Below, piece by piece: positions 44,103 through 64,000 of a stretch of 64,000 bases of DNA (position 1 is its first letter; each line of letters starts with the position of its first letter). The position numbers and the translations under genes were made by a program. The stretch comes from Asterias rubens (taxonomy: Eukaryota). The notes under the pieces were generated by a model, which was not told the DNA's origin, searched no databases, and saw nothing but the letters and a program-made list of their open reading frames with translations. The stretch covers positions 13,392,001 through 13,456,000 of the forward strand of contig NC_047070.1 of assembly GCF_902459465.1 (NCBI RefSeq), read 5' to 3'.

Positions 44103-46963
44103 TTAAAATGTACAGAACAAATTATCCTATTTATGTGAGTTTACTTTATTTATCGCAAGTACTCTTTTTTGTACTGTTACAAAAGTGTTTACTAAATACA
44201 GGTATATTTTCCTTGTTATACAAACGCATTCTGAAATAATCTGTAATTAATTTGAAAATATAAAACCAGTCGACATCATTTTATGTATGTTAACTTTCTG
44301 ACTGACAAATGTTTATAGACAAGGAACGAGTTACGGACAGGTTCCTCAAACGATCAAATTGTCGCTATTTACCAAAAGAGGTATTTGTTTTGACCGCACC
44401 AGCACAATTAATTATCGGTTAAACACTTAACAAATAGTTTAACGCTTGGAAGGTATAGCAGATGAAGTACTAAAAAACAAATAGGGGGTATGTACCGAGT
44501 CGTTTCTTCGCAAACAAGAGCACCTAAAATCTTTGGACAACACATTTAAAAAAGTGTCTGAAATACTTCTCCAAGACATGAGAAATGAATTCAACGTTCG
44601 AATCTAAAAAAACAGATGTTACAACATAAAAACATCATCACCTTTGTTTCTATGATCAATAAATATGAAATGTATTTATTTAGGTGTAGGCCTACATCAA
44701 ATCACTTGCCATCAATAAACTCAAGCTAATTATATTATATCATCTAAATTGCACATATAAATAATGAAAACACATTTGTTTGAGATCGAATCAGGTGAAA
44801 AGTTAAAAAGAAGAATAAATAAATTATATAGGATTTGAGCATTGCATGGTGAGGTATCAATGTATATTTGGTTTGCGGTAGCACCATGTGTGTATCTACT
44901 TGCCAGGTAGGGTTGTAAATTGTAACTGAAAGCATTTTCAGCCTGGATTTATAACAACACTTGATAGATAAAATATGGCAATGTTTACATAAGATCCTCT
45001 AAAATTTGACACATTGTAAACACAAGTCAAAATTCAACCTAGTTGTACAATATAAAAAGTACGCCAACCAGTTATTATAAAAAATTAAATGACTAAGGTT
45101 ACAGTCATAACCGACAGCTGTGGGTTACAGAACCAACTTACATATTATGTTAAGAATGAAAACATAAGTTACAATAGTTAATTCTATCCCTTTGTATTAT
45201 GTTTTTTTTTTTTCTCATAAAACAGATGTATCTATAAAAAAAAAAAACATTCTAGGAAATTCATCGGTTTGCCTTTCTACACTTGAATGTTAATCCTACA
45301 GATTATTGCATTCCTTTTTTATAAAGCTCTTTTGGTATTGTGTGTTGCAGAGTTCTTGTAAAATGCTGTTTTTTGTTTAGTTTCAAGTGCGTACATGCGT
45401 TTTTGTTCCTTTTTGTGTGTGCTGGTGTGGTGTGTGTCTTGCCAAAGGTGTGTGGTTGCTGTTCAATTTAATTCCCCTTTTTGCTTGTGCATTTTTATAT
45501 TTTTATTTCTGTATATAAATTGCTGTTCTCTTAATGATGTCCTTTTAATCTTTTTAAAATGTTGTGTCATAGTTGCAATTCAGTTGTTATGCTGTGATGG
45601 CTATTGCCAATAAACCTTCTATCTATCTATCTATCATCTATCTGTTGAGGGGACGTTAGATTTCCTTTGGCAATTGGTAACCCTTCTCTGGAGTAAGGAG
45701 ATAAGTAAGATCACACTTAAGTGCTTATTTCTCCTTAGGAATGAACCAAGGGTGGCAGTGGGTTTTAAATTTGTTGAGAATTTGCTTTGTTGAGTGAGAA
45801 AAAGGCTGATGAAAAATCCATCTTCAGACTTCATTAGCATATTGTTAAGATGCAGATAGACTATATGCCTGACACCAGTACTCACGTTTGTTTGCATTCT
45901 GGCAAATCTATGTGATATATTCAGGTAATAATGGTCAATCAGGTTATAAAACAAAATAGTTAAAATCTTAATAAAAACTTTAAAACAACTGCGTAAATTC
46001 TTTTAAAATGAAATAAAATTCCTTCTTCTCAACCCTTTAAAATCTTTCAGATCATCCAGGTCAAATAAACGATTTGGACAAAAAAAAATACCTTTTTGTC
46101 TTCTGCGTTGATGCTTCATTAAATTAGGAATACATAAAAATTATAAGTTTTATAAGAAGATGTACATATATTTTAATGTTTGGAAATAAGAAGTACATAT
46201 ATATTAATGTTTGTGTTCACATTACAAACAGAAGGTAACAGTGACACAGAAACAACTTTTGCAATTTTTCCAAATTAAAGAAATGTCAGGACACAATTTA
46301 TCCATGATTTGTTTAATTTTAACTTCAACTTCAACGAGAGGAGATAATAAAAAGCAATCAGACAACACATTGTTTTATCAGCTGCTCGGAAAAAAACAAC
46401 AACCAAAAACAACAACATAATAGATGATGTCACTTGAGCTAGAATTGAACATTGTTTGAAAGATATTTTCACAGTAGAATGTAATGTTTCACACAGACAT
46501 CCCTAGAAAATGTGTGGTTTTCCTTTTACTTTGTCAAGTAACACCGTCCAAATTTTGTTTTACAACACAGCGGACCTTGTTAGTTCTCTATGTAAAAGGA
46601 AAACCACACAGTTTGGGGGTCTATTGTGTGGATCACTATATTCTACATTTAAAACAGCTTTCCCAACAAATTTCATAAAAGCTTTTTATAGTCCGAAGTG
46701 CCAATAAGAAGGCAATGTGTCCATTTAATTATGCCACACAATTTTGACAAATAGCCCAATGGCCCAAAGGTCAAATTATTAGAGGTAAAAAAACAGCTAA
46801 AAAGGCTGGAAGGAGAATGGATTATTTTTCTTTTGGAAAGTATGAAACGTAGCAGTGGGCACATTGAAAATCTTATTGAGATTTGCCCCAAAGACTTCCA
46901 TGTACATTACTGGTTGAGGGTCTGGGTCACCACTGGGGTACCCTTACACACTGAATTCAAGCT

Positions 46964-47811
46964 TCACTTGAAACACATACAGCAAGGGGACCTTCTCTCT
47001 TCCTTCCAGAACTCAGTGGGGATAGAACGAGTAAAATCTTTCGCCACACGGCTAGTCCTTCTTCTGCAGAGAAGAATTGCCAGGATGTATTCTGCTTTAT
47101 TGTGAGAACATTTGAGGTGGGGTCGATGCTTTTCAGATTTTCTTGGAGAACCATCTGGAGCTCTGCCTTCACTGGATCTCAAGAAATCTCCAGACATGCT
47201 ATAGAACAACTGGTCATCGATATCACAGAAGTAGTAGAAGTGGTTAGAGTCCGTAAAGAAGAGGTGTTTGGATTCAGACACCTTAGAAGCCCTGTCGAAA
47301 TGGGAGGACGAGGATTCCTTAGTACTAGAACTTGATGAGATAGATGTTGGCTGACCTCCTGGAGGAATAGATGTTTTTATCCCCTGATCATCGCTGGAAC
47401 TCATGTCTCCTTCAGATCCTTGTTGATTCTGTTCCTTCTGACTGATTAGGGAGGAAGGTTCCTGCTCGTTGGGTATTGATGGAGGACTATCCGAGTTATC
47501 CACAGCAGATACATGAACATCAACCTTCACAGTGACTGTCTTCCTGACAACGTAGTCCGATCGAGACGTTGAGCTATCGTCGCTTGTCTCAATCTCCTCA
47601 GAGTAGAAATCTGAAATTCTTCTTTTGGAGCGCCGCCTCTTTTGATGACTGAATGATGACTCCAGGTTATCTTCTGAGCTGTCATTATTCATGTCTTTGC
47701 ATCGGTGGATAGAGGTCTTGGGTAGACTATGGATTGTGACCGGTGGGAAAGGAGTACTGTCTGTTACACTGGCATCCGAGGAGAAGTCAACAAAATCATC
47801 GGATAGAACAT
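46964..47811 (-). CDS. MUN-DEP gene terminal coding exon
   Basis: Acceptor tttgttctcttag|AT, ORF ends ..RRSPCCMCFK*. Confidence 0.75.
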
Positions 47812-50800
47812 CTAAGAGAACAAAAATATTTTAAATGTACACTTTACTTGAAAACAAAGGGTGGAGTTACCAAAATCACTTCACACTTTGCTTGAAGGCA
47901 TGTTTACTAAGTAACTTTGAAGTTAAGTTATTTCATATACCGTACATATGGCTCTTCTCATCTGTTGGTGGAACACATGTCATGCTTCACCCTTTATTTG
48001 GCCATGTGTTTACTGCCTTGACGTGTAACACACCCAAATTGGAGGAATTTTGGCAGCAAAGCTTTGTAGTGTTGTTTCAAAACAAGCAATTCCTTCCAGC
48101 CAGTATGAAACAAGTCATTGTGAACAAGAGATGGCGTCTACAAGGAGATGTTTACATTACTTAGCTTTTCTTTAAAAATCCACAGAGTTGGGCAGGATGA
48201 GTTTCTGTGTCTTTTTTTGTGTTTATTGTGAACAAATTCAAATTACACATATCTATTTGTGTGTTACATAAAACAAATAATTGATTGCATTTCATTTGTG
48301 CATTATTCATAGAATATAATCTCTCCGTGGAATCTGGCTTTTCCATTTCATTGAGCTTCACCTCGCGACATGGAATATTCAAGACGTCATCTTATATAGT
48401 CTGCATTCTGCGTCAATGCATTCGTACACACTCAATATTTGTATAATATACCCTGTATAACATGTTTAAGTTTGATTATGTTGCAAAAGTTTAAAAGTGA
48501 ACAATGTTTTTGATTTACCCTTTGTTCCTCTGCTTCGTGATGATACATGCTGGATGAAGTTCATATCCAAGAGTTTCTGACCAATCATCTTAGCCTTCCT
48601 CTTGTACTTGCTTCTCTTGCTTGTTGGCCTCTCTGTTCAGACAAACCAGAATAAGTGTTGGATAACTTTGGCAAATCACTGCATAGTGATGTACCCCCAA
48701 GAAGTTACACCTCGGAGGACATTTAACAACAAACAGCAAATGGGGAAAGTCAAAAGTTCTAATAGGAAAAGCTTTTCTAAGCTTTTGATACAAATATAAT
48801 CATTACCTAGATGATGACTACAAAGGTATCAAACTTGATCTTATCAAATTAAAGAAAAGGTATTCATTTGGTAATCACTCTTAAAATAATTGCCACCAAA
48901 AATTAACTTGGTTAAAAGTACAGTAGCTTTCAATGGTATAAAGCATTTTGAGAATTATTTCACTTTCAAGCAATGTGGTTATGGAATATCTATCAGTTTT
49001 TATCCCCAAAATTTGAATCTGAAAAACATTACTGTCAAACGTTTCCCAGATTGTGTATTCCAATTGCGGTTTATTCTTCCTGCATGGAAACGGCTCTTTT
49101 TTAGGGGGGGGGGGGGATATATCAAAAAAGGCTACCACCTTTCGCAAGGAAATTTGACTAGGTTAAAGGGAAGGTATAAGTTTGGTAATTACTCAAAACA
49201 AATATTAGCTTAAAATTTACTTGGTTACGAACATTGGAGAGCTGTTGATAATATAAAACACTATAAGAAATGGCTCCCTCTGAAGTAGCAAATGTTGAGA
49301 TACACCAAGTGAGAGCACTGGTCTTTGACAATTACCAATAGCGTACCTTCCCTTTAAACTTATGGCATTTATACACATTTATATCATATTAAAACGGTTC
49401 CAAAAACCAAAGGTATACACTCCCTTTAAGCACTATTGTGACAATCGCAAGCTCTGTGTGTTAGAATACAACTTGATTCCCTAATATTTGGATAAAAACC
49501 TTGTGCATTGTAGTAATGGACTAGAAGCCACATGACCATATGATGTCCAGTGAAACACTTGCGCTTCTTATGGAGTGCTTGGTACATGGCTTGTAGTATT
49601 TCCCTTGGTAAAGGCTCTGTAGTTGGGTCTGCTTCTACCTCCTATAGGGTCATACAGTAGGGGTCAACAACAAGTAAGGAAAGAGCCATCAATGGACGGT
49701 CAAGCAGAGGTACCAAACGCCACAAATATTAATAAGATTTCTCAGCCAATTTCGGCAAATGAGCAGCCAAATTAACCACCAAGCTATTCTATTTCGCACA
49801 AAATCGAAATGCTACTGAAAAAGGGTCATTCAATTTTGTTTTATGATCAGTCAAATGTAATGTTGCGTCATTCGATTTAAAAAAATAATCATTCGATTCA
49901 ACAATTCATAAAAGCAGCATTCAAATTCGCAGACGCTTCTTGAGGTGTGTGTGTCACGAAAAAGAATGACAATGTGCTAAATTGAACAGAGTGCTTAAGG
50001 ATTTGACTCGACTCAAAACGAAATTGAATAGCCCAATTCTGAATTTGAAACGCAGTAACAACTGGAGAGGCAAAACAGCATTAATTTGAACGCATAAAAA
50101 ATGAAATTGGCTGCTTATTTGCCGTAATTGACCGTGAAAACCTATAGTAGTAATAATAATAATGACATTTGTAAAGAGACCGATGCAAAAACCTCTCGGC
50201 GCATAGAGATTTAAACATTGTAAAGAACTAGGCTGGCAAATATGCACAAGAAGACTGTTCAAAGGAAACAGCGCTGCGTAAGAAAATGATCTGTGACAAA
50301 ATAATAGTCCAAGAAAATATGTCACTTATTATCGTTGTGTGAATCTTTTGAGCAAATCTGTCCTATTCCATCTGGATTTGGTGACAAGCCTACACATTGA
50401 CCAAGAGTAGCCATCTTGGTTTTCCTCTAATCAAACCATTGACCTTTCTTTTTGCAACGTCACATCCCAAGTTTTTGCCAACCGAGATTGGAAAACTATA
50501 AAAAGCCATAAGTGCAAAATCAAGAAAAGATTGCTATTTTTTAACCAAACATGTTGATTTTGTTTAAAACAAAACAACTTTTCATGAGAGGTATTTCATT
50601 TAATTGAAAATTTGCAGAAAATGTTTAATTTTGTGGAAACATCTGTTTTTAAGATTGAGTGTTTTACTAACATTCGGCCGACCATGCCAACCAAGGCGGT
50701 TTGTTTATCAACAAAAGAAAGGTCTATTGACACAAACAGTGGCTGGAGGGTAAAATAGTCAGGAACCTTCTTGTAAAAACAACAACAGCATTCTAACAAA

Positions 50801-53800
50801 GATATATGCAGTGTGGGAACTAGATGAGATCTTACCCTGAGTAATGTCTTCTGGTAGAGATGAACCAAGTTCTTACTTGATAAGCTGTGAAGCTGCAGCA
50901 TGGTCAATACCACCTCCTTATCAAACAATAACATCAATACAGAAAAGGCTCATTATTTTAATCATAACATTATTAATAGTAGACTGCATCAGTCTAGCAT
51001 GTACTCCAACATGTGGTCTCAAAAATGTTTGAATAAACCCATGACCTCCACAGTTTATGAAGCTGTTTAATAAAAGACAACGTTTTATATAGGATTTGAG
51101 GCATTGCATGGTGAGGTATCAATATATGTATCAATATATGTTTGGTTTGCGGGAACAAAATGTGTGTATCTACTTGCCATGTAGAGTTTCTTCTTTAGAG
51201 AACTGTCTTGCTTTATTCTACTACCCCAGAGTAGATTATCGGATGTTCGGGGGCTTCTCAGTTCTTAAAGGAAATGTCGAAGAACTATCCTGCTTACTAA
51301 CTACTACCCGGGCGGAAGGTATAGAAACATGGCTGGGACTACTACTTTAGCTTATAAGATCGTAAATAACTGTACTACCGCGGAGTCAGTTCTTGAATTG
51401 GTCTCAATGTTTCAACTAGCTTGCTCTAGTCATCGTCAGGAGACTGAAGAGTATTTTTGTTAAACCTTGGCTTCCCAACAGTATTGCTTTATTGTGTGAA
51501 ATAAAACAAACCGGGAACTGAACATGTCTCAACATTGGAAAATCTACAAGTACGAGTATGAGCTGACGAGTATGGCAAGCCCCTACTCTATAACACCAAC
51601 TGCTACAAGAAGCTGTGGGGCAAATGTCAAACCAAATCAGACACGTCTGTATTCAGTTTTATTCCAGGGGGCTCTAGCACAATTTGTCAAAACATGATGA
51701 AAGGTACATTTAAATTACAAGTTCATTTATATTGAATGATAATTTAACTTACAGCTGGTTTGACAAGCTGATCTATTTCAAGCCCCTCACCCCTGGCATG
51801 AAGAAACTCAATCAGATGCTGCAAAAACACAACATGCAATAATAATAAATGGAACAAATAAACATAACAGAACAATGTCTAAAAAACTGTATGTACTAAA
51901 ATACTATGAAAATAAAATGTAAAGAAAATAAGAGTGCTTACCAACCAAAGAGCACACATTGTGCAAACGCAAATATAAGTTAACATCAGGCCAATAACAG
52001 GGTTTTTTTCTGAGAAAAATACCATTATAGTATTTTTCTCAGAAAAAAAACAGTCAAACATCAAATACATATCAACATACATAGCAAGTATTTAAAGACA
52101 CTAGAAACTATTGGTAATTGTCAAAGACCAGTCTTCTCACTTGGTGTATCTAAATATATGCATAAAATATAAAACCTGTGAAAATTTAAGCTCAATTGGT
52201 CATCGAAGTTGCGAGATAATAATAAAAGAAAAAAACACCCTTGTCACACGAAGTTGTGTGCTTTTAGATGGTTGATTTCGAGACCTCAAATCTAAGTCTG
52301 AGGTCTCAAAATCAAATTCGTGGAAAATTATGTCTTTCTCGAAAACTATATTACTTCAGAGGGAGCCGTTTCTCACACTGTTTTATACAATCAACCTCTA
52401 CCCATTACTCGTTACCAAGAAAGGTTTTATGCTAATAATTATTTTGAGTAATTACCAAAAGTATCCACTGCTTTTAAAAACATAAACAAAAACCCTAACC
52501 AGAGAGCCAAAAAGCAAACAAGCGAATCTGGAAGTTGGAACTATCCAAACAAAAAGCATCACAATATACAGGCATGCAACTGTCCGTTGAGGACAATTTT
52601 CAAAGGCACAACGCAAGTGCGGAGCGAGGCAGCAGAAACGCCACGGGACATGATACCCACAATGGTACCCTAGAAAATGTTAATGCCAGGCATAAATTAG
52701 GCTAAATATAAAGTAAAAAAACGTGGAACTCCGCGGAAACGCGGAAGAGTTGCATGCCTGAATATAATTCCGTGAAAGTGTTATAAAAGAGGTATTCAAT
52801 CAAGTATCCAATGTGCAAAATAAAGAAAACGAAGTTTGAGAAAGCTTGTAGGGACCTACCGCTATGGACTGCGATAAAAGCAATGCGTGCCTGTCAGCCT
52901 TCTCCTCCAGTAGCTTCAAGCCCTCTACCTCAAGCTCAAAATCTGCCACTAGACGTAGCCACAGATTCTCCATGAATAGAGTCAGGCAAGGTGGCGTTAA
53001 CCAACTACCAAGGGCCTTCCAGTGATCAAACAGACATGAGGTCAGAGGTTGGAGTCTGTCTGCTATGGTCAGACTGTCAAAGTCTGGAGATAGCAGTACA
53101 TACAGGGCTTGCTGGAGCACTTGGTTTAGCTGCAATGGAAGGATAAATACAAGAAATGAAGATCAAGATAGTGCAACATCCCAGGGCCTTCCAGTGATCA
53201 AACAGACATGAGGTCAGAGGTTGGAGTCTGTCTGCTATGGTCAGACTGTCAAAGTCTGGAGATAGTAGTACACACAGGGCTTGCTGGAGCACTTGGTTTA
53301 GCTGCAATGGAAGGATAAATACAAGAAATGAAGATCAAGATAGTGCAACATCCCAGGGCCTTCCAGTGATCAAACAGACATGAGGTCAGAGGTTGGAGTC
53401 TGTCTGCGATGGTCAGACTGTCAAAGTCTGGAGATAGTAGTACACACAGGGCTTGCTGGAGCACTTGGTTTAGCTGCAATGGAAGGATAAATACAAGAAA
53501 TGAAGATCAAGATAATGCAACATCCCAGGGCCTTCCAGTGATCAAACAGACATGAGGTCAGAGGTTGGAGTCTGTCTGCGATGGTCAGACTGTCAAAGTC
53601 TGGAGATAGCAGTACATACAGGGCTTGCTGGAGCACTTGGTTTAGCTGCAATGGAAGGATAAATACAAGAAATGAAGATCAAGATAGTGCAACATCCCAG
53701 GGCCTTCCAGTGATCAAACAGACATGAGGTCAGAGGTTGGAGTCTGTCTGCTATGGTCAGACTGTCAAAGTCTGGAGATAGCAGTACATACAGGGCTTGC

Positions 53801-56800
53801 TGGAGCACTTGGTTTAGCTGCAATGGAAGGATAAATACAAGAAATGAAGATCAAGATAGTGCAACATCCCAGGGCCTTCCAGTGATCAAACAGACATGAG
53901 GTCAGAGGTTGGAGTCCAGACTGTCAAAGTCTGGAGATAGCAGTACACACAGGGCTTGCTGGAGCACTTGGTTTAGCTGCAATGGAAGGATAAATACAAG
54001 AAATGAAGATCAAGATAGTGCAACATCCAAGGGCCTTCCAGTGATCAAACAGACATGAGGTCAGAGGTTGGAGTCTGTCTGCTATGGTCAGACTGTCAAA
54101 GTCTGGAGATAGTAGTACACACAGGGCTTGCTGGAGCACTTGGTTTAGCTGCAATGGAAGGATAAATACAAGAAATGAAGATCAACATAGTGCAACATCC
54201 AAGGGCCTTCCAGTGATCAAACAGACATGAGGTCAGAGGTTGGAGTCTGTCTGCTATGGTCAGACTGTCAAAGTCTGGAGATAGTAGTACACACAGGGCT
54301 TGCTGGAGCACTTGGTTTAGCTGCAATGGAAGGATAAATACAAGAAATGAAGATCAAGATAGTGCAACATCCAAGGGCCTTCCAGTGATCAAACAGACAT
54401 GAGGTCAGAGGTTGGAGTCTGTCTGCTATGGTCAGACTGTCAAAGTCTGGAGATAGTAGTACACACAGGGCTTGCTGGAGCACTTGGTTTAGCTGCAATG
54501 GAAGGATAAATACAAGAAATGAAGATCAAGATAGTGCAACATCCAAGGGCCTTCCAGTGATCAAACAGACATGAGGTCAGAGGTTGGAGTCTGTCTGCTA
54601 TGGTCAGACTGTCAAAGTCTGGAGATAGTAGTACACACAGGGCTTGCTGGAGCACTTGGTTTAGCTGCAATGGAAGGATAAATACAAGAAATGAAGATCA
54701 AGATAGTGCAACATCCAAGGGCCTTCCAGTGATCAAACAGACATGAGGTCAGAGGTTGGAGTCTGTCTGCTATGGTCAGACTGTCAAAGTCTGGAGATAG
54801 TAGTACACACAGGGCTTGCTGGAGCACTTGGTTTAGCTGCAATGGAAGGATAAATACAAGAAATGAAGATCAAGATAGTGCAACATCCAAGGGCCTTCCA
54901 GTGATCAAACAGACATGAGGTCAGAGGTTGGAGTCTGTCTGCTATGGTCAGACTGTCAAAGTCTGGAGATAGTAGTACACACAGGGCTTGCTGGAGCACT
55001 TGGTTTAGCTGCAATGGAAGGATAAATACAAGAAATGAAGATCAAGATAGTGCAACATCCAAGGGCCTTCCAGTGATCAAACAGACATGAGGTCAGAGGT
55101 TGGAGTCTGTCTGCTATGGTCAGACTGTCAAAGTCTGGAGATAGCAGTACATACAGGGCTTGCTGGAGCACTTGGTTTAGCTGCAATGGAAGGATAAACA
55201 CACGAAATGAAGATCAAGATAATGCAACATCCCAGGGCCTTCCAGTGATCAAACAGACATGAGGTCAGAGGTTGGAGTCTGTCTGCTATGGTCAGACTGT
55301 CAAAGTCTGGAGATAGTAGTACACACAGGGCTTGCTGGAGCACTTGGTTTAGCTGCAATGGAAGGATAAATACAAGAAATGAAGATCAAGATAATGCAAC
55401 ATCCCAGGGCCTTCCAGTGATCAAACAGACATGAGGTCAGAGGTTGGAGTCTGTCTGCTATGGTCAGACTGTCAAAGTCTGGAGATAGCAGTACATACAG
55501 GGCTTGCTGGAGCACTTGGTTTAGCTGCAATGGAAGGATAAATACAAGAAATGAAGATCAAGATAATGCAACATCCCAGGGCCTTCCAGTGATCAAACAG
55601 ACATGAGGTCAGAGGTTGGAGTCTGTCTGCTATGGTCAGACTGTCAAAGTCTGGAGATAGCAGTACACACAGGGCTTGCTGGAGCACTTGGTTTAGCTGC
55701 AATGGAAGGATAAATACAAGAAATGAAGATCAAGATAATGCAACATCCCAGGGCCTTCCAGTGATCAAACAGACATGAGGTCAGAGGTTGGAGTCTGTCT
55801 GCTATGGTCAGACTGTCAAAGTCTGGAGATAGCAGTACACACAGGGCTTGCTGGAGCACTTGGTTTAGCTGCAATGGAAGGATAAATACAAGAAATGAAG
55901 ATCAAGATAATGCAACATCCCAGGGCCTTCCAGTGATCAAACAGACATGAGGTCAGAGGTTGGAGTCTGTCTGCTATGGTCAGACTGTCAAAGTCTGGAG
56001 ATAGCAGTACATACAGGGCTTGCTGGAGCACTTGGTTTAGCTGCAATGGAAGGATAAATACAAGAAATGAAGATCAAGATAATGCAACATCCAAGGGCCT
56101 TCCAGTGATCAAACAGACATGAGGTTAGAGGTTGGAGTCTGTCTGCTATGGTCAGACTGTCAAAGTCTGGAGATAGCAGTACATACAGGGCTTGCTGGAG
56201 CACTTGGTTTAGCTGCAATGGAAGGATAAATACAAGAAATGAAACTCATGCTCATAGTATGCATGCCAGGTTCCTAATGTACACAAGGACAATGATAGTT
56301 ACAACACCTATTTCATGTAAAGGGTCCAAACATTTTCTTTTCACAAACAGTGCAAGAAAAAGAGGGTGACAAAGCAGAAGATGGAGAGATGAATTAGGCA
56401 CATACAGGGGCATTGCTTGGCAACAAAGAGTGCAGGATAGAATGAGATGGAGAATTGGTGAAGAGGCTCTCCTCCTGCAGTGGAGTGAAACATGCTAAAC
56501 GATGACACAGTCATTTTGGCAAAATCTTTTATGGTGAGCATAATTTGATATTTCAGTTAACTTTTGCGCATAAGTAGCTCTAAACTCTAATACTGTCCAC
56601 TGTGTTTGAAGGAAAGAAAAGATTAGTTTGTCAACTTAATCTTTATGAACACTGCCCCTGATTTCACGAAGCGCTGCGACGTTAGGTGTGCCAGGCATCG
56701 CAAACCCTACGATGCATTGCTTCTTGCGATGAGTTTGATGAAATCGGGGGCTGGACGTATAACACCAACAAGAGCTAGCCTATACGACTGTACCTTGTAT

Positions 56801-59800
56801 GTAAGTAGGTTGATCTGAGCCTGTAAGGCACTGTTGAGGTAATCTAGATGATCCCCTTCAGCAAGACTAGATGTGTCTATATCCAAATGCTCCATAGGGG
56901 CATCGTAGATTCCATTCTGCTGCTGGTCTTCAATAGACTGGCTGGCAGAGAGGCGACGGCCTTTAAGTCCTAAAAATTAACAATGTCTAGATCTTGACTA
57001 ATATTCTCATGGAAATCCAGCAAATAAACAATGTCTAGATCTTGACTAATATTCTCATGGAAATTCAGCAAATAAACAATGTCTAGATCTTGACTAATAT
57101 TCTCATGGAAATCCAGCAAATACATTTATTTTGCCTCTCTCAAAATGACTAATTCTCATAACTAATTCTCAAAACTAAGATACTATTTATGCCTCATTTT
57201 AAGATTCTATATTAATTTATCCAATCATATTTTGTTCAAATCGATTAAAAACAACATGATATCCTTAATCTGGCGTACAAAATGATATTTAAAATCCAAG
57301 AATTTCACCATTAGGTGTTTTTATGTTTTTGCATCAGCATCTGCCATAACTACGCCTACTTACTGCCGCTTGGACTGAGGCCTTAGTTACCACTAGAATC
57401 ATATGTCTAAAGAGCGATTCATACTTCATGCGAATGCGAATCGAATTTGATGTGAATTTGTCATCACAACTCTCCTTTCGCAGCGATATTCACAAGTGAG
57501 TTGGGCAGAGTTGAACTGCTGCAAATCATTTGTTGCGAATTTGTGACGTTAACATTCACTTCACATTCGCATTCGCAGGAAGTATGAACCGAGCTTAATG
57601 GCAAGCTTTGATGGTAATACATTGACAGACAGCGGGAAAGACTTACGAGACTGCAGCATTCTAGACAGCTCTGGTAAGAGGCAAATGATGCTCCACATAT
57701 TGTTGATTCTAATGCACATCTACAAGTTAGAGAAACAACATTAATTGATAACAGAGACAACATTTGATGACAAGACTAATGTAAAGTAGCCTTAATAGGA
57801 AGACGGGGTAAGAGTGACTAAATTCACCTAATGTATATGTATGGCAAGGAAGAGGGGAGATGATTGTAGTCAACTTTCCTATTGGTGAAGGGTGAAACAT
57901 AAAATAATTAAGCAGGTAACCATTCACAAACAGAATGGTATTTGAGCTGGTAACCTTGTCTGGTGAGCAAAATCGTTCTGTGCACCAAGCTTAAAATTGT
58001 CATGCCTAAAAGCAGTGGACACTATTGGTAATTACTCGAAATAATTGTTAGCATAAAAACTTACTTGGTAATGAGTAATGGACAGAGGTTGATAGTACAA
58101 AACATTGTGAGAAAGGGCTCCCTCTGAAGTGACATAGTTTTTGAGAAAGAAGCAATTTCTTACTCAAATAATAAAAGACTTCAGCTGAAGCCTTTTATTA
58201 TGCATACTGAAAGCACACAGAGTAATGTTTTTTTTCTTCTTTCATTATTCTCTTGCAAATTGATGACTAATTGAGCCCAAATTTATGCAAGATGGGATAT
58301 ACCAAGTGAGAATACTGGTCTTTGACAACTACCAAACGAGTCAAGTGCCTTTAAGCAGCTATGACCAAGATGTATTACCAATATGTAGATGTTTGAGATA
58401 AATATAGAGAATGCATAATGCATACCTGTGATGTTATAGGTTCATGCTTGTCACATAGTAGGGCGGTATCTTTGTTCATGTAGTAATCACATGGAATGTT
58501 ACTCTCTCGTTCATGTCTGCAGCGACTTAGCATCGCCTCTTCACGACTTACTAGAACTCCAGAGATAACCTGCTCAGAAATCAAATAACAATTGGCAAAA
58601 AACTTTAAGTTATGTTCCCATTGTGTTATTTAATTAAAATAACACTTTTGTAAACCAGGGCACACTTTCATAGAGCTGCTTACGCAGAAAATATATTGCT
58701 TTACATTTTTCTGCTATGCAGACGTGAGCAGGACACCAGTCACAAATTACACATGTGGCATGGTAGTTTGGCTGATAACCCTCATTTTAGTGTGCTTAGC
58801 TACATTTAGTGCTTAAGCAGCTTTATGAATTTTGACCCAGGCCAACAGAATCAACTAAAAAGACATGTACGGACAATTTGCCCATACATGTACATTTGAC
58901 TCTTTCGTCTAACGCATCAATGTACCACAAATACCCAAATTTCACACAAGGACCTTTCAAGGTCGCCATTAGTGAGTCCTTTTATATTTGCTTGTGTAAT
59001 GAACTGTTAAACGCCTTGTGTACATAAATTTATGTTTAACATGTACCATCTCATCAAATGTGTGTTTTGTGATGTAATTTTGTAGTACACATGTGTCACT
59101 TGGTATGCATTGAGACACAGAAAGGTTGAGTTCAGAGTTCCATTTCCATGTACATGTATTTAAGCTACCAGCTACCTTCACGTTAATCATGTTAATATAC
59201 TTCTATCTGTGCATTCAGCACAAAGTCATCCAATGAAATCATTCAATTTGTCAATAAACCCTGTCTTTAACCTTGAAGGGTTAACACAGTGTACTGTTAC
59301 CGTTAGAGGTTTTGCAAGTCTACGAATACACATACAGATACCTCGACACTTTGTGTGTTCACATGACGCGTATCCGACTATCGTATTTTGCACAATCGTT
59401 AGCAACGGATACAGGAGCTCATATACGTCGTAAAAAACGGATATTGTTTTGCAGCCTTTTACTTGTCTTTTTGTCCCAGATCAAACACATTTCCCATGGA
59501 ATTGCTTTCACTGGTATCGTGCTTGATATAAATACAAAATTGGTAGTCATTTGCAAGCAAAACGATGAGAAAATGCAGTATATAAAACGTGGGGTCTTTA
59601 TCGGTCATGCTTGTCGAGAAGAACAGTCATGATGAATGCGAGCACACTCCAGTAACACATACCTATATTTTGCGAAAACCAAAATCCACCAAGCGGCTGA
59701 TGTAAACGGATACAGTGATCATATCCGTATCTGTACCCGCACACTTGCGTAACCTCTCTTATATTTCTAATTGAACCATTACCTGAGAATCAACTAAGGA

Positions 59801-62800
59801 GTCAATGTTGTCCTTTTCAACAGCACATAAATCCATGGCAAGAAGATTGTTTGCATATAAACAAAGCACCTTGATGATAGCCTAGAAGACAAAGGTAAAC
59901 AACAACATAAATAAAAATAAACAAAAAGAATACCATAGTTGACATATTGATGCCATGCTACTTCGGAACCAGATGTCTATATTAAAAGGTTAAGAAAACA
60001 CGAGTGGTTCATCATGATTATTATGGTTTCCAGCTTAATCTATTTTCTTGTTTGAAATTTAAATTATACCCAGGGGTAAACATGTAAATGGGTACCTGCG
60101 AGGGTAGAGGTTGATAATGTGAATGAAAAAGCCTTCGAGGCGCCACAGCAGCTCGGGGCTGTATACTCCCTATTGGGAGCTGAGAAAGATTAAATGGATG
60201 TTATTGGCCCAATGACCAGGGCACTAATGTAAAGCGCATTGATACGGTTAATTGTGAAATGCGCTATATTATTGTTATTATAGAAAATATTTTAACAGTC
60301 CTGTCCCAATTTTTGTACGGGTAGAGAAAGACAAAACAAATTTGGTATTTATCATTTGGTTCTCTAGAATCCCTTAATGCGCAAGCTGGAGATTTTGCAT
60401 ATACCATTTGAAGGTCTTCTCAAAAATCTGTCCTTAACAAATTAGAGGTGTCTATTGTTAGGCCGTGTCTAAATTGGTGACTTTGGCTACAGCTACGGCT
60501 AGATCAGCGTGTCTGTCAGTGTTGAAGAATAGCAGACGCGCGCACCCTAGCCGTAGCCGAAGTCGCCAATTCGGACACGGCCTAAAAGTATCATTTATAG
60601 TATTGCTTGGGCCTATCAAACCACAGTCATGTCAGTGGAGGTATCAACAAAGTAGGCATACAACTCTGTAGCTGCAAAGCATCATGTGTATTGACCTGTA
60701 GATGCTGATAGACACACTACATGTATCTTTAGTCTTTGAGAATACCCTGTGCTTATAGGGGTTCAACTCCAAGATACCGCTTGATTCATTCAATTCTACC
60801 CTGACGCATACAAAACAAAACCACATTAGGCTGTTTTCTTGCCTTAGTTTGTTTTAAAGCAGGTTTTTGCTGGGTACACAAAGTTCCACAATAGCTGCGG
60901 AACACTATAGACAGAGCCATGTATAGAAAGAGTTGTGACTGAAAACAAAGTATCCCCTGCTAAATGTGCATAATTACTGTTTCCTTGATGTACAGGTATG
61001 GTCAGAAATGTAGTAAATTGAGTTTGCGTTATACTAACAATGGTTTCAAGGTTTAGTTACTGTGTCAAACGTCCAAAGTGAATACCATGCTTTTAAGAAT
61101 AATTGTATCATTATGACAATAGACCGATCCAGTAGGCTCCGCCCACAACGCACGTGTGAGCAAGAACACGTGGGGCTCTCCAATGCCTTTCTACACAACT
61201 CTGCCGCGCGCGCCAAGATACGCGCACGCCTGTCGGACCTTAGTGTCGGACCTTCGTTGCGTTGTGATTGGTTAATACGCAATGGGGCGGAGCTTAATGA
61301 ATCGGTCTATTAAACTCACCTCTTCAGTAACTTCTTTCAGTTCCACTTTCATGACTCTCATTCTCTCTGCAAATGTCCTATAATTCAATGATGCAGTGAA
61401 GTCTCCGTCAGGACCCAAAGGTAAATTAACATCCGACGGACATAGAATCCCTATCAGTTTCTGCATGAAGCCAATGATCCGCTGCGATATGAACATGACA
61501 TCCACCATACTAGAGGAGAACCGGTCTGGATGCTTGCTCTTTGACTTTGAGTACTGTGTGTGATCTGACTGAAAGGATACGGATGCCCCACGAGATCGGA
61601 GCTGATCCGTCATCGAGGGGAGTGGGTTGGAGGAGGTGGATGTGGATGTGACTGATGAGGACCGGATGCTGGATGAAGTGTTGGAAGATGGCATTGAGGT
61701 TGTCAAGCCTGTTGCTTCTGGTCTGGGTGCTTCCTCTACTGTAGATGAAGTTATAGAAGATTCACCAAGGGCAGTATTGACATTGTCCAAAGTTAACTCA
61801 ACAGGCCGAGTGGTCCTGACTGGAGCAATATCACATTCATCATGTGAATCTGTCTCTGGAAGGTGAGTAGAGTCCGTTTCTTTGATATCTTCAGTACTGT
61901 TATTGTTATCATCTTCACATGTCAAGTCATTCTTTGTGAGTGGTGTTTGTGTAGTGGAGCTTTCCAAGTCCATGGAACTGTTTATGTCCTCTGCAGTGCT
62001 GATTTGAAGATCTGATCTTCCAATATCAATTTGCTTTGGTTTTACTACACCTTCCTGCATGGAGCTAGTCTCCAGAGGTACGTTCGTCTCCAAGGATATC
62101 TTGTTATCAGAGTTTGTCAAACGCTGTATAGTACTCTCCTCTGTCTGAAATGAGTCTGTCTCTATTTTCAGGTCTATGCTACTTGCATGTTCATGTTGAG
62201 GCACTTTGGCAGTAAAGCTTACCACACCTGAGCCTGCCTCGTCAATTCTAATATCTGAGGATGACGTGACCAAAGGGTGAAAGTCGGCTGATGTTGCATT
62301 TCTTCGAAGCAAGACCACAAAATCTTCAGTCTTTTGGGGCTTTATCTCTGGCATTGACTGGATTCTTTTTATGCTTCCACTTCCATTGAAATATAAAGCG
62401 GTACCTTTGTACAAAGAATAACAATAACGATTATAAACCCACCTCAGATCCTCAAAAATCCATCTTGAGGTATTACTTGAATTGGATGGATCTGGTACTC
62501 TATCCCCAAGTCTACAAAATGTTCTAGAAGCAGGCATGCAGCCACATCAACCAAATATGACCATGGGGCACCGCAAGAGATCAAAAGTGCTTGATTTTTC
62601 ACGAGGGAGGAAAACCGGATGGTCTGGAAAACCCTCGTGGCACATTAGAGAACTAACTCACAACTCAACTCACATATGGCCTTTGCCGGGTATCAAACTA
62701 AGGTCACCTTGGTGAGAGGCGGAGCGCTTTACTTAACTGTCCAATGCGGGGCCAGGCATACCAATCTCATAGGGGGTCCAAACATTTGGGTGCTTAGTTA

Positions 62801-63972
62801 CCATGGGGTATTTGAGAGGATTTTGGACAGCTCTCGGCCAAACCACTGAGGATGTTTAAGAGCAAAATGTAGAACAATGAGAAGGACTTGTGGCGGTAAG
62901 ACAACATTGATGACAATATTCAAAGTGAACAACGACAGTAAATAAACACAGAATCAATTAATGTAGTCCTCATTAATATGAGAGATATAACAGTTTGATT
63001 GATTATTCCGGTCAGACCTTTGACAACATAAGAAGATTTATAATTTGTTTTTGATAATCCCAGACTATTATTAAATAGTCAAAGCAGGGGTGATAAAAGT
63101 GTCTCTCTGTGGGACCCAGTATGCAACATAAGTCAAGTGACGTCGGAGCTCACCTTGTTGGTTTCTACCCTTTGAAGACTCCTCTGTGGTATTATTGCGT
63201 TGGTCTTTGGGATGTAGTCTGGAACTGGGTACAGTGGTTGAAGAGCTGGTTTCATCAGTAGGTGTTACTTGACTGGACGTCTCCTAAAACCAAACACAAA
63301 CCCAACATTGCGTCAAAGTACAAATGACATTAATGGATTAACCAAAAAAGGCTGGCTTCAATGTCAAATTATGTCTATGTTAGGGCCAATGAAGACACTG
63401 ATGATGTAAACATCAGGCTGAGTAGCCTTGAGACACTCAGGGTGTTTGTGAATTGAAAGATAAACCTAAGTTTTAAGCTCTCAAAAATACAGTGCTAACA
63501 AGTACAACAAATGAAAAATACAGATTTTACACAATAGTGTATTTTCCATGAAGAATTTAAGAAGCCAACAAGGGTGGGTTTTTCCCGTTATTTTCTCCCG
63601 ACGCCGATGACCGATTGAGCCTAAACTTTCACAGGATTTTCCCTGTATAGTCCTTTCCTTTGCATCGACATGGCTAATTGTGTTCTTGTTTAATAAAGAT
63701 ATGTGTCAGCATTAAAATATCTGACATTTTTTGGTTGAGGACAATAAGGTCACAACTTGTGCCATTTACAGCCCCAGTCAGTGTTTGGTAGTAGCTACTA
63801 GCCATAACTACAGTCTTTAAAAGCTACCGATCAAAGTTTGCAATTTACCTGTTTGGTTTGGACTCCATTGGATGAGCCATCCATTGAGGGGCCCACTGGT
63901 CTGAATGGGGAGGCTGGAGAATGTCTTAAGATGCTGGAAGGATTCTGCCATTGTCTTAGGGGAGGCTCAGGG
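46964..63972 (-). CDS. Large multi-exon gene (5' end outside window): Munc13/BAIAP3-type MUN (MHD1/MHD2-like) region followed by a DEP domain and a Ser/acidic tail
   Basis: Exons found: 63849-~63972, 63154-63283, 61320-62404, unresolved small exons in 59900-60940, 59783-59881, 58426-58569, 57647-57719, 56794-56969, 52860-53129, 51753-51818, 50836-50916, 49500-49641, 48519-48632, 46964-47811. Phase-consistent where resolved. MUN motifs CIRINNM and EFLHARGEGLEIDQL; DEP motifs CFTGHHMVMWLL and IGQKLLDMNFIQHV. Confidence 0.75.
48519..48632 (-). CDS. MUN-DEP gene exon (DEP middle)
   Basis: AKMIGQKLLDMNFIQHV. Confidence 0.8.
49167..49353. mobile_element. Short Kolobok-like MITE (internally deleted subfamily)
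   Basis: agggaaggta..taccttccct TIR, TTAA flanks. Confidence 0.7.
49500..49641 (-). CDS. MUN-DEP gene exon (DEP N-part)
   Basis: KCFTGHHMVMWLL. Confidence 0.8.
50836..50916 (-). CDS. MUN-DEP gene exon (EVVLTMLQLHSLSSKNLVHLYQKTLLR)
   Basis: AG/GT bounded, end of MHD2. Confidence 0.78.
51181..51445 (-). mobile_element. Penelope-like fragment carrying a degenerate minimal hammerhead motif
   Basis: Minus strand 51444-51401 GTCTC CTGACGA T GACTAG AGCAAG CTAGTT GAAAC ATT GAGAC. Confidence 0.45.
51753..51818 (-). CDS. MUN-DEP gene exon (HLIEFLHARGEGLEIDQLVKPA)
   Basis: MHD2 signature F.HA.G.GL. Confidence 0.85.
52096..52473. mobile_element. Kolobok-like MITE copy
   Basis: TTAA flanks, family body. 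Confidence 0.75.
52569..52760. mobile_element. hAT-like MITE
   Basis: 13-bp TIR caggcatgcaact; aatata on both sides. Confidence 0.6.
52860..53129 (-). CDS. MUN-DEP gene exon (MHD2 start, LNQVLQQ..LLLSQSIA)
   Basis: The only array unit with a complete exon and donor GCG|gtaggt. Confidence 0.8.
53009..56242 (-). repeat. 172-bp tandem array x19 of splice acceptor plus 5' half of the MHD2 exon
   Basis: The 76-aa ORFs recur at 172-bp spacing; one unit has a 13-bp deletion (~53916). Confidence 0.95.
56794..56969 (-). CDS. MUN-DEP gene exon
   Basis: AG/GT bounded, 176 nt. Confidence 0.75.
56979..57122. repeat. 48-bp tandem repeat x3 abutting a splice acceptor
   Basis: aacaatgtctagatcttgactaatattctcatggaaatccagcaaata. 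Confidence 0.9.
57410..57595. mobile_element. Harbinger-like MITE
   Basis: TIR ..ttcatacttc.tgcgaatgcgaat. Confidence 0.6.
57647..57719 (-). CDS. MUN-DEP gene exon (MCIRINNMWSIICLLPELSRMLQS)
   Basis: AG/GT bounded, MUN-like helix. Confidence 0.75.
58010..58350. mobile_element. Kolobok-like MITE copy
   Basis: Family TIR and body. Confidence 0.7.
58426..58569 (-). CDS. MUN-DEP gene exon
   Basis: AG/GT bounded, 144 nt. Confidence 0.7.
59783..59881 (-). CDS. MUN-DEP gene exon (AIIKVLCLYANNLL..)
   Basis: AG/GT bounded, 99 nt. Confidence 0.7.
60461..60582. mobile_element. PIF/Harbinger-like MITE
   Basis: ggccgtgtc..gacacggcc TIR, TTA/TAA flanks. Confidence 0.7.
61118..61311. mobile_element. 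MITE
   Basis: aatagaccgat..gctccgccc and mirror. Confidence 0.7.
61320..62404 (-). CDS. MUN-DEP gene: large Ser/Thr-rich exon
   Basis: Acceptor ttattctttgtacaaag|GT, donor GAG|gtgagt, 1085 nt, phase 1 to 0. Confidence 0.75.
62600..62760 (-). mobile_element. SINE fragment (gggttttc..ccggttttcctcc core)
   Basis: Reverse complement of a widespread SINE core plus tRNA-like boxes. Confidence 0.5.
63154..63283 (-). CDS. MUN-DEP gene exon (ETSSQVTPTDE..RNQQ)
   Basis: AG/GT bounded; only one open frame, and it fits both neighbours. Confidence 0.7.
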
Positions 63973-64000
63973 GATCAAAGTTTGCAATTTACCTGTTTGG
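63829..64000 (-). repeat. 144-bp tandem duplication of an exon end plus donor (continues beyond window)
   Basis: gatcaaagtttgcaatttacctgtttgg at 63829 and 63973. Confidence 0.75.

What the first reader, a model, noticed from the sequence alone, without database searches (positions are those of the whole stretch)
46964..63972. Munc13-type MUN domain followed by a DEP domain instead of the usual C-terminal C2
Seen: exons encoding CIRINNM, LQPLTSCLFDHWKAL..LW, FLHARGEGL and LQLHSLSS..LY splice in frame directly into CFTGHHMVMWLL..IGQKLLDMNFIQHV. Known: Munc13, BAIAP3 and Munc13-4 carry a C2 domain after MHD2, and DEP domains target proteins to membranes and GPCRs. Inference: a vesicle-priming-type scaffold with a DEP membrane module, an architecture I do not recognise from characterised families.
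Basis: partly seen in the sequence, partly recalled or inferred. Interest (0 to 1): 0.7.

Follow-up and report, generated by a model that had tools for sequence, protein, structure and literature searches.

The report
Munc13-like MUN protein ending in DEP
This starfish-type gene encodes an uncharacterised relative of the Munc13 vesicle-priming proteins that has no calcium- or lipid-sensing C1/C2 domains and instead ends in a DEP domain and a cysteine tail, an architecture conserved from sea anemones to amphioxus.

Summary
RNA contigs from four public runs, covering two species, join the MHD2-type exons directly to the DEP exons in one transcript. The frame is open through to the stop at 46964.

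The gene is larger than the finding. It has about 27 exons over about 40 kb, and its 5' half lies beyond the window end. It encodes about 1,730 aa and is single-copy in this genome.

Orthologues occur in echinoderms, hemichordates, amphioxus, brachiopod, annelid, molluscs and a sea anemone. All are named "uncharacterized" or, automatically, "MHD2 domain-containing".

- **MUN domain.** AlphaFold models of the Patiria orthologue give a complete Munc13-type rod. The N half scores Z 21.1 against Munc13-1, with Exo70 next at 10.8. The C half scores Z 17.5, with Tip20 next at 14.5. A family profile hits Munc13-1 by sequence at E 7.8e-5.
- **DEP domain.** It is firm (DEPTOR E 3e-11) but split by a serine-rich insert of about 180 aa.
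- **Absent domains.** No C1 or C2 domain is found, and Pfam's MUN model does not hit.
- **New here.** A conserved C-terminal cysteine or CaaX motif.

The function, a membrane-anchored tether or SNARE-assembly factor, is inferred. I found no paper on it. The scan had noted only this same stretch before.

The parts
63993..64000 (-). Last 8 nt of the exon 64166-63993 (extended coordinates). The rest of this exon, and about 14 further upstream exons encoding the N half of the MUN domain, lie beyond the window end.
   Evidence: tblastn of the Patiria orthologue P0001; splice-site and frame solution.
63154..63283 (-). Small exon (130 nt) in the Ser/Thr-rich disordered insert that splits the MUN domain.
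   Evidence: Inferred. It is the only AG/GT exon that restores the frame between 63993 and 62404. Not checked against RNA.
61320..62404 (-). Large exon (1085 nt). It holds most of the ~310-aa disordered insert (17% Ser, 13% Thr). From about 61550 downward it holds the first helices of the C half of the MUN domain.
   Evidence: Homology to P0001 residues 1013-1102; family HMM match; composition. The acceptor at 62404 was chosen by homology and frame.
59783..59881 (-). MUN C-half exon.
58426..58569 (-). MUN C-half exon carrying the family-invariant Cys/His-rich block (WGCRH...DC...Y...LCD...EPIT).
57647..57719 (-). MUN exon with the invariant M-C-x-R-I-N-N motif (CIRINNM at 57716-57696).
56794..56969 (-). 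MUN exon upstream of the MHD2-type region.
52860..53129 (-). First MHD2-type exon (LQPLTSCLFDHWKAL...LW).
   Evidence: RNA contigs cover 52860-53000 and splice from 52860. phmmer gives E 6e-34 to the Patiria orthologue. The family profile aligns this region to the end of the Munc13-1 MUN domain (3swh, E 0.011).
51753..51818 (-). MHD2-type exon (FLHARGEGL).
   Evidence: RNA contigs. Weak Pfam TPR_PATROL1 match on the orthologue over this region.
50836..50916 (-). Last MUN exon (LQLHSLSS..LY).
   Evidence: RNA contigs.
49500..49641 (-). Short linker and first half of the DEP domain (RKCFTGHHMVMWLL).
   Evidence: RNA contigs. Pfam DEP profile 11-31, E 0.014.
48519..48632 (-). Second half of the DEP core (IGQKLLDMNFIQHV).
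   Evidence: RNA contigs. Pfam DEP profile 42-65, E 0.0046.
46964..47811 (-). Last exon. It holds: a ~180-aa Ser-rich insert inside the DEP domain; the strand FFTDSNHFYYF (47260-47228) that completes the DEP fold; conserved terminal helices (47095-47033); the Cys cluster CCMCFK (46984-46967); and the stop codon at 46966-46964.
   Evidence: RNA contigs from 47811 down. In the AF2 model of the orthologue the strand has pLDDT 86, and DEP fold matches span residues 380-675. C-terminal Cys conservation.

Best explanation
The stretch holds the 3' two thirds of one single-copy gene on the minus strand. The gene encodes a protein of about 1,730 aa and belongs to an uncharacterised metazoan family.

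Shown:
- The protein has a complete Munc13-type MUN (CATCHR) rod, split in its middle by a disordered Ser/Thr-rich insert of about 310 aa.
- About ten residues after the last MUN helix comes a DEP domain. It is itself split by a Ser-rich insert of about 180 aa.
- After DEP come two conserved helices and a C-terminal cysteine motif. This is a canonical CaaX box in mollusc, sea-anemone, crinoid and Diadema orthologues, and CCxCFx in starfish.
- There is no C1, C2 or PH domain.

Inferred mechanism: the rod works like other MUN/CATCHR proteins, as a vesicle tether and SNARE-assembly scaffold. In Munc13-1 and Munc13-4 the far end of the rod is fixed to a membrane by a Ca2+-dependent C2 domain. Here it would be fixed constitutively by DEP (acidic lipids, or a membrane protein partner) together with a lipidated C-terminal cysteine. 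Regulation would then come from the two long Ser/Thr-rich inserts rather than from Ca2+ or diacylglycerol.
For: **One transcript.** Contigs of four runs from two organisms join the MHD2-type exons to the DEP exons. The frame is open, with AG/GT at all 26 junctions, and the product aligns end to end with Patiria P0001 residues 24-1790.

**Family.** Orthologues of 1,300-2,200 aa with the same order of blocks occur in five phyla: Echinodermata, Hemichordata, Chordata (amphioxus), Brachiopoda, Annelida, Mollusca and Cnidaria. The gene is single-copy in this genome.

**MUN domain.**
- N half: model vs Munc13-1 5ue8 gives Z 21.1, rmsd 4.0, 383 aligned. Munc13-4 gives Z 16.8. The best non-Munc13 hit is Exo70 at Z 10.8-11.2. 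The Foldseek-independent search gives the same order.
- C half: model residues 4-363 align to Munc13-1 1175-1516 with Z 16.4-17.5. Munc13-4 gives Z 16.3-16.5. Tip20 (14.5) and Sec10 (14.0-14.2) come next.
- The two halves abut on the Munc13-1 sequence at about residue 1190-1200.
- Sequence: the A1 profile hits Munc13-1 at E 7.8e-5. The A2 profile hits the Munc13-1 MUN C-terminal module at E 0.011. Pfam TPR_PATROL1 matches 4 of 22 members, best E 4e-5. The AFDB top hits are BAIAP3-like. Four orthologues carry the UniProt name 'MHD2 domain-containing protein'.

**DEP domain.**

**No C2 or C1.** Pfam scans of five full-length orthologues at E<=1 (four) or E<=0.01 (one) find none. The models contain no beta-rich domain other than DEP.

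**C-terminal Cys.** It is invariant in the nine-sequence alignment A1. It forms a CaaX box in 11 of 26 sequences.

**Known biology.** Anchoring Munc13-4 to the membrane through C2B, coupled with SNARE binding, was required for SNARE complex assembly (review PMC3849599).
Against: - Pfam MUN (PF06292) finds two canonical MUN genes in this genome but not this locus. The N-half profile alone finds nothing in PDB by sequence.
- For helical rods, a Z of about 14 can arise without kinship. The C half stands only 2-3 Z units above other CATCHR proteins.
- The structures were predicted for the Patiria orthologue (56% identical overall), not for the window's own protein, and from shallow alignments of 21-22 sequences.
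- No SNARE, lipid or partner binding was tested.
- Starfish C-termini are not canonical CaaX boxes.
How the distant DEP strand and the terminal helices pack is therefore read only from pLDDT values and aligned ranges.
Confidence: 0.75

Rival explanations
1. The rod is a generic CATCHR domain, as in exocyst, Dsl1, COG or myosin-V tails, and has no special kinship or shared mechanism with Munc13. The protein would be a cargo adaptor or tether subunit that does not act on SNAREs.
For: Pfam MUN does not hit the locus. The C half also scores Z 12-14.5 with Tip20, Sec10, Sec6, Sec8 and Myo4p. ESM Atlas neighbours include Sec6, Vps53 and Sec10 clusters at scores close to the CAPS cluster.
Against: Munc13-1 and Munc13-4 are the top hits for both halves in four searches. 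For the N half the gap to the next family is 6-10 Z units. Munc13-1 is the only natural non-DEP protein in PDB matched by sequence at E < 0.02, at 7.8e-5 and 0.011. PATROL1 and MHD2 labels also point to MUN.
Confidence: 0.12
2. The protein is mainly a signalling scaffold. Its DEP domain recruits it to a GPCR or a G-protein/RGS-type anchor, and the helical rod serves as a spacer or interaction platform unrelated to vesicle fusion.
For: DEP domains of characterised proteins act in receptor and G-protein signalling (my own knowledge of Dishevelled, RGS7/9, Epac, P-Rex1). The closest DEP sequences here are DEPTOR and P-Rex1. The long Ser/Thr-rich inserts look like phospho-regulated linkers.
Against: The most conserved parts of the family are the MUN blocks, not DEP. 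Every characterised MUN/CATCHR protein acts in membrane traffic (PMC3849599). This reading also does not exclude the trafficking one.
Confidence: 0.08
3. The MUN and DEP exons belong to two neighbouring genes, or the locus is a decaying pseudogene, and the joined reading is an artefact.
For: The locus carries odd tandem duplications of partial exons (53011-56243, and across 63829-64113). These could suggest decay.
Against: Spliced contigs in four runs from two species join the exons. The whole ORF is open with canonical splice sites. The same architecture is conserved across five or more phyla.
Confidence: 0.02

Closest known systems
Munc13-4 (UNC13D) and BAIAP3, the short Munc13 proteins
   Same: A MUN rod of about the same length, including the MHD2-type C-terminal region. 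Munc13-4 (9la9) is the top Foldseek hit for the C half and scores Z 16.3-16.8 for both halves. BAIAP3-like entries top the AFDB search. A membrane-binding module sits right after the last MUN helices.
   Different: Munc13-4 and BAIAP3 have C2 domains on both sides of MHD1-MHD2 (PMC3849599). This family has none. It carries DEP plus a Cys/CaaX tail instead, and two long disordered inserts. Pfam MUN does not recognise it.
Munc13-1/2/3 (UNC13A-C)
   Same: Best structural match overall. The N half aligns to Munc13-1 542-1206 (Z 21.1) and the C half to 1175-1516 (Z 16.4-17.5). There is a significant profile hit at E 7.8e-5.
   Different: No C1, C2B, C2C or calmodulin-binding region was detected. 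Whether the residues Munc13-1 uses on syntaxin are kept was not tested.
CAPS/CADPS and plant PATROL1 (other MUN-domain proteins)
   Same: MUN/CATCHR fold. There are weak Pfam TPR_PATROL1 matches. A CAPS2-like MUN cluster is the nearest ESM Atlas neighbour, score 0.88, which is a lead only.
   Different: CAPS has C2 and PH domains and lacks MHD2 (PMC3849599). PATROL1 has no DEP. Neither ends in a Cys/CaaX motif, as far as I know (own knowledge).
DEP domains of DEPTOR, P-Rex1, pleckstrin, Epac and DEPDC1
   Same: Sequence hits: DEPTOR E 3e-11, P-Rex1 E 3e-6. Fold hits: Z 7.5-8.2 over 75-97 residues.
   Different: This DEP is interrupted by a disordered insert of about 180 aa before its last strand. 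It is attached to a MUN rod, a partner domain not described for DEP in any paper I found.

Membership tests
Munc13/UNC13 family (Munc13-1/2/3, Munc13-4, BAIAP3) | MUN domain fold (CATCHR rod, subdomains A-D) | tested here: met
   AF2 models of the Patiria orthologue: N half Z 21.1 vs 5ue8, C half Z 17.5 vs 7t7c. Munc13 proteins top all four VIA searches. This is by proxy (orthologue) and by prediction.
Munc13/UNC13 family (Munc13-1/2/3, Munc13-4, BAIAP3) | MHD2 sequence homology region | tested here: inconclusive
   The family profile aligns positions 294-407 to the end of the Munc13-1 MUN domain at E 0.011-0.03. Pfam TPR_PATROL1 matches up to E 4e-5. Four orthologues bear the UniProt name 'MHD2 domain-containing protein'. 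The PROSITE profile itself could not be run here.
Munc13/UNC13 family (Munc13-1/2/3, Munc13-4, BAIAP3) | MHD1 sequence homology region / match to Pfam MUN (PF06292) | tested here: not met
   PF06292 hits two other genes in this genome but not this locus at E<=10. No orthologue matches it at E<=1. The disordered insert falls where the two halves abut, at about Munc13-1 residue 1190-1200. The full-length profile still hits the Munc13-1 N-terminal MUN region at E 7.8e-5.
Munc13/UNC13 family (Munc13-1/2/3, Munc13-4, BAIAP3) | C2 domains flanking the MUN domain (and C1 in Munc13-1/2/3) | tested here: not met
   No C2 or C1 Pfam match in full-length orthologues. There is no beta-rich domain other than DEP in the models.
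CAPS/CADPS | C2 and PH domains upstream of the MUN domain; no MHD2 | tested here: not met
   No C2 or PH match. An MHD2-type region is present.
DEP domain (Pfam PF00610) | DEP sequence profile and winged-helix-like fold with C-terminal strands | tested here: met
   The window's own exons match profile 11-31 and 42-65. 18 of 22 family members match, most just under or over the 32.7-bit cut-off. DEPTOR E 3e-11. Fold Z 7.5-8.2, spanning the distant strand.
CATCHR tethering-factor fold (exocyst, COG, GARP, Dsl1, MyoV tail) | Stacked helical-bundle rod | tested here: met
   Tip20, Sec10, Sec6, Sec8, Exo70, COG4 and Myo4p/MyoV tails score Z 10-14.5.
Prenylated (CaaX) proteins | Cys at position -4 followed by two aliphatic residues and X; actual lipid modification | tested here: inconclusive
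   A canonical C-a-a-X ending occurs in 11 of 26 family sequences (molluscs, Actinia, Anneissia, Diadema). The window's protein ends CCMCFK, with Cys at -3, -5 and -6, so it does not fit CaaX. Lipidation cannot be tested with these tools.

The most novel reading that the evidence does not exclude
This would be an ancient fourth branch of metazoan MUN-domain priming factors. It would be permanently lipid- and DEP-anchored and independent of Ca2+ and diacylglycerol. It would couple a DEP-recognised membrane partner (a GPCR, or a SNARE-like anchor of the R7BP/R9AP type) to SNARE assembly. It appears to have been lost in vertebrates and ecdysozoans.
Probability: 0.25. Interest if true: 0.8.

Novelty: new variant of a known kind. 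Interest (0 to 1): 0.6.

Why it matters
Every studied MUN-domain priming factor (Munc13-1/2/3, Munc13-4, BAIAP3, CAPS) is fixed to membranes and regulated through C1, C2 or PH domains. This family keeps the MUN rod and replaces those sensors with a DEP domain and a cysteine or CaaX tail. It has kept that design since before cnidarians and bilaterians split.

The family is a natural test of which Munc13 functions belong to the rod itself. It is also a possible link between DEP-type signalling and membrane fusion. It adds a trafficking gene that the common model animals (vertebrates, flies, worms) seem to lack, which may be why nobody has studied it. Tractable species that carry it include Patiria, sea urchins, amphioxus and sea anemones.

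Tried and rejected
- **Pfam on single exons.** Only weak DEP hits appeared, and nothing for MUN.
- **Pfam models.** PF10540 is not in the library. PF06292 does not hit the locus.
- **N-half profile vs PDB sequences.** It found only designed coiled coils.
- **ESM Atlas with the MHD2 exon.** It gave only CATCHR-type leads below 0.8.
- **First gene model.** Large-exon acceptors at 62523 or 62511 broke the frame. I replaced them with an extra exon 63283-63154 and an acceptor at 62404. The choice rests on homology to Patiria and on frame, not on RNA.
- **Apparent long ORF across the window end (64175-63834).** There is a TGA between two tandem copies, so only the first donor, at 63993, fits.
- **Exon 1.** The exon with the ATG and about 23 aa was not found within 7 kb upstream by a motif search.
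- **Family HMMs vs the two canonical MUN genes of this genome.** Only weak, partly co-linear exon hits appeared (best E 0.01 among 1,034 ORFs). These are too weak to use as evidence.
- **Two profile-based word searches for more distant members.** They added only molluscs, hemichordates, crinoids, a brittle star and one sea anemone. Absence from vertebrates, arthropods and nematodes is therefore an impression, not a result.
- **Rfam and tRNA scans of 46000-64000.** Nothing found.
- **Literature.** No paper pairs a MUN domain, MHD2 or Munc13 with a DEP domain in one protein.
- **The window's own spliced protein.** It could not be passed to Pfam or AlphaFold by reference, so the Patiria orthologue stood in for it.
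Full report
**1. What is in the sequence**

The region 46964-64000 holds minus-strand exons of an animal gene.

Laying contigs of four public runs on 47100-53000 gave single records whose pieces are contiguous in the record. On the genome they lie on 52860-53000, 51752-51818, 50835-50915, 49500-49640, 48519-48632 and 47100-47811. Runs X1 and X2 are organism A and run X3 is organism B. In X10 the two unlisted exons exactly fill the 148-letter gap in the record.

After resolving the one-base alignment ties, the exons are 53129-52860, 51818-51753, 50916-50836, 49641-49500, 48632-48519 and 47811-46964. All have AG/GT, and the frame is open to the stop at 46964. The MHD2-type exons and the DEP exons are therefore one mRNA in two species. 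This removes the main way the finding could have failed.

**2. The whole gene**

The window is G000:C10:13392001-13456000, in a 417.6-Mb genome. From its size and its closest relatives this looks like a starfish, but I did not verify the species.

A phmmer search with the first MHD2-type exon found a 1,790-aa protein of Patiria miniata (P0001) at E 6e-34. It also found proteins of 1,100-1,900 aa from other invertebrates.

tblastn of P0001 against the window plus 30 kb fetched upstream shows co-linear exons from about 87112 (extended coordinates) down to 46964. Most of the N-terminal 630 residues are thus encoded beyond the window.

With splice sites solved by homology and frame, 27 exons give an open 1,705-aa product. 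It aligns end to end with P0001 residues 24-1790 at 56% identity. It scores 672 and 705 bits against the family HMMs.

Three points remain weak:
- The first exon (about 23 aa) was not located.
- Exon 63283-63154 rests on homology and frame, not on RNA.
- The acceptor at 62404 rests on the same.

The family is single-copy here. A six-frame search of the genome with the family profile hits only this locus.

**3. The family**

Orthologues with the same block order were found in:
- starfish, sea urchins, sea cucumbers, crinoids and a brittle star
- hemichordates (Ptychodera, Glandiceps)
- amphioxus
- Lingula and Owenia
- gastropods and bivalves
- the sea anemone Actinia tenebrosa

All are named "uncharacterized" or "hypothetical". 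Four carry UniProt's automatic name "MHD2 domain-containing protein".

No vertebrate, arthropod or nematode protein appeared, even in the exhaustive phmmer run at E<=0.001. That query was only 111 aa, and the other searches are word-limited, so absence is not proven.

Conservation is concentrated in two modules, at P0001 residues 1-660 and 1000-1480, plus a C-terminal block. Poorly conserved stretches lie between them.

**4. The DEP domain**

- The window's two DEP exons match consecutive parts of Pfam DEP.
- 18 of 22 family members match DEP.
- The family profile hits DEPTOR DEP1 at E 3e-11 and P-Rex1 DEP1 at E 3e-6.

The Pfam matches stop at about profile position 56-65 of 72. The missing last strand appears about 180 residues later. 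In the window's protein it is FFTDSNHFYYF at 47260-47228, after an insert that is 25% Ser.

In the AlphaFold model of the Patiria C module this short strand has pLDDT 86, in a sea of values near 30. Matches to pleckstrin, pleckstrin-2, DEPDC1 and Epac DEP domains (Z 7.5-8.2, 75-97 residues aligned) span model residues about 375-675, so they include that strand. I read this as a DEP domain split by a disordered loop. I could not inspect the coordinates.

**5. The MUN domain**

Sequence evidence is weak but consistent:
- Pfam MUN (PF06292) finds two canonical MUN genes in this genome (on C11 and C2) but not this locus.
- Orthologues give only sub-threshold TPR_PATROL1 matches, in 4 of 22 members, best E 4e-5.
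- The C-module profile aligns its positions 294-407 to the very end of the Munc13-1 MUN domain. This is 3swh at E 0.011, and it recurs in 7t7c, 5uf7 and 4y21.
- The full-length profile hits Munc13-1 at E 7.8e-5 through its N module.
- In both PDB searches, no natural non-DEP protein other than Munc13-1 scores at E below 0.02. Designed helical repeat proteins appear at E about 0.02.

Predicted structure is much clearer.

The N module (P0001:1-680) has helices at 174-597 with pLDDT around 90. Its matches are:

| Target | Z | rmsd | Aligned | Notes |
|---|---|---|---|---|
| Munc13-1 C1C2BMUN (5ue8) | 21.1 | 4.0 | 383 | model 77-604 on chain 542-1206 |
| Other Munc13-1 and Munc13-4 entries | 16.6-17.0 | – | – | – |
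| Exo70 (next family) | 10.8-11.2 | – | – | – |

These results hold both in the Foldseek-seeded search and in the exhaustive one.

The C module (P0001:1030-1790) has its rod at residues 10-375, with pLDDT about 85-95. Its matches are:

| Target | Z | Notes |
|---|---|---|
| Munc13-1 | 16.4-17.5 | model 4-363 on residues 1175-1516 |
| Munc13-4 | 16.3-16.5 | – |
| Tip20 | 14.5 | – |
| Sec10 | 14.0-14.2 | – |
| Myo4p | about 14 | – |
| Sec6 | about 13 | – |

The AFDB search is topped by BAIAP3-like entries.

The two modules meet at about Munc13-1 residue 1190-1200. Together they make one complete MUN rod. The ~310-aa Ser/Thr-rich insert sits inside it. That probably explains why profile models of MHD1 and MUN fail.

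According to the review PMC3849599, MHD2 is shared by all Munc13 proteins but not by CAPS. This places the family nearer to Munc13 and BAIAP3.

Caveats: helical rods reach a Z of about 14 by arrangement alone, the C module's margin is small, and the models are of an orthologue.

**6. What is absent, and what else is present**

No C1, C2 or PH domain appears in Pfam scans of full-length orthologues. None appears in the models either. The first 170 residues are mostly disordered, with two short helices.

After the DEP strand come two conserved helices (pLDDT 86). Many CATCHR alignments extend into them, at model residues 726-754. This hints that they pack back on the rod, so that DEP would be an insertion near its tip. 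That is inference only.

The protein ends in a conserved cysteine, which is invariant in alignment A1. The endings are:
- a canonical CaaX box in molluscs (CVSS, CVTS, CISS and others), Actinia (CFNI), Anneissia (CWCL) and Diadema (CFKY)
- CCxCFx in the three starfish and in the window's protein (CCMCFK)
- other near-terminal Cys forms elsewhere

A lipid anchor is therefore likely for at least part of the family. It is untested.

**7. Likely mechanism**

Shown: the architecture is MUN rod, then DEP, then a Cys tail, without Ca2+ or DAG sensors. It is transcribed as one mRNA and conserved across phyla.

Inferred: the rod acts as other MUN/CATCHR proteins do, tethering a vesicle and scaffolding SNARE assembly. 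For Munc13-4, membrane anchoring through C2B coupled to SNARE binding was needed for SNARE complex assembly (PMC3849599). Here DEP sits about ten residues after the last MUN helix, where that C2 domain would be. Together with a lipidated tail it would provide a constitutive anchor.

From my own knowledge, DEP domains bind acidic lipids, or membrane proteins such as GPCRs. The RGS anchors R7BP and R9AP are themselves SNARE-like. This makes a DEP next to a SNARE-handling rod suggestive, but nothing here tests it.

The two long Ser/Thr-rich inserts are candidate phospho-regulatory regions.

**8. Comparison and novelty**

The protein works like a short Munc13 and has the Munc13-type fold. It fails the family's defining domain set, since it has no C2 domains and no Pfam MUN match. 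I therefore file it as a new variant of the MUN-domain kind, not as a Munc13 member.

Public databases already hold the orthologues, with automatic DEP and MHD2 labels. The architecture is thus recorded, but as far as the searchable literature shows it is undescribed.

The scan's earlier notes hold only this same stretch (s1-181623) and the intronic array (s1-181627).

**9. Verdict**

- the gene is twice as long as the finding
- both domains are split by disordered inserts
- a Cys/CaaX tail follows DEP
- the family dates from before the cnidarian-bilaterian split

Interest is 0.6. This is a real, ancient and unstudied relative of central exocytosis proteins, but it is a domain-swap variant and its function is still only inferred.

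Noticed in passing
window 53011-56243: A tandem array of 172 bp x 18.9 copies, 98% identical, lies in the intron just upstream of exon 53129-52860. Each unit copies the last ~40 nt of the intron, the AG acceptor and the first ~132 nt of the exon. A stop follows in frame where each copy runs into the next. About 19 identical decoy acceptors therefore precede the real one. The family profile hits every copy. An organism-B contig of 5,588 nt runs about 4.1 kb past 53000, which roughly fits the summed upstream exons with a single copy of this one. I did not lay reads on the array.
   Followed up: partly
window 63829-64000, continuing to about 64113 beyond the window (L004:1-113): Two tandem copies of about 144 nt cover the 3' part of exon 64166-63993, its GT donor and the first ~20 nt of the intron. 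A TGA lies between the copies, so only the first donor gives an open frame. This is the same kind of partial-exon-plus-splice-site duplication as the 172-bp array, in the same gene.
   Followed up: partly
window 52025-52615, 49070-49463, 51040-51433, 49661-50251: These intronic stretches have very high summed contig depth in all four runs, up to about 1.2 million at 52222-52418. They also show many internal joints and loose ends. They are probably copies of abundant, transcribed interspersed repeats. They are not tRNA-derived by ARAGORN and match no Rfam family.
   Followed up: no
window 56974-57122: A 48-bp x 3.1 tandem repeat lies in the intron between exons 57719-57647 and 56969-56794.
   Followed up: no
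window 58426-58569 and 57647-57719 (P0001 residues ~1150-1190): A family-invariant block rich in Cys and His (W-G-C-R-H ... D-C ... Y ... L-C-D ... E-P-I-T ... M-C-x-R-I-N-N) lies inside the MUN C half. The spacing could suggest a metal site or a structural cluster. The model shows lower pLDDT (69-72) over part of it.
   Followed up: no
G000:C11:2771600-2782900 and G000:C2:24911900-24929400 (loci L007-L012): These are the two canonical Pfam-MUN genes of this genome, presumably Munc13-like, BAIAP3-like or CAPS-like. They are useful as in-genome comparators for a MUN phylogeny.
   Followed up: partly
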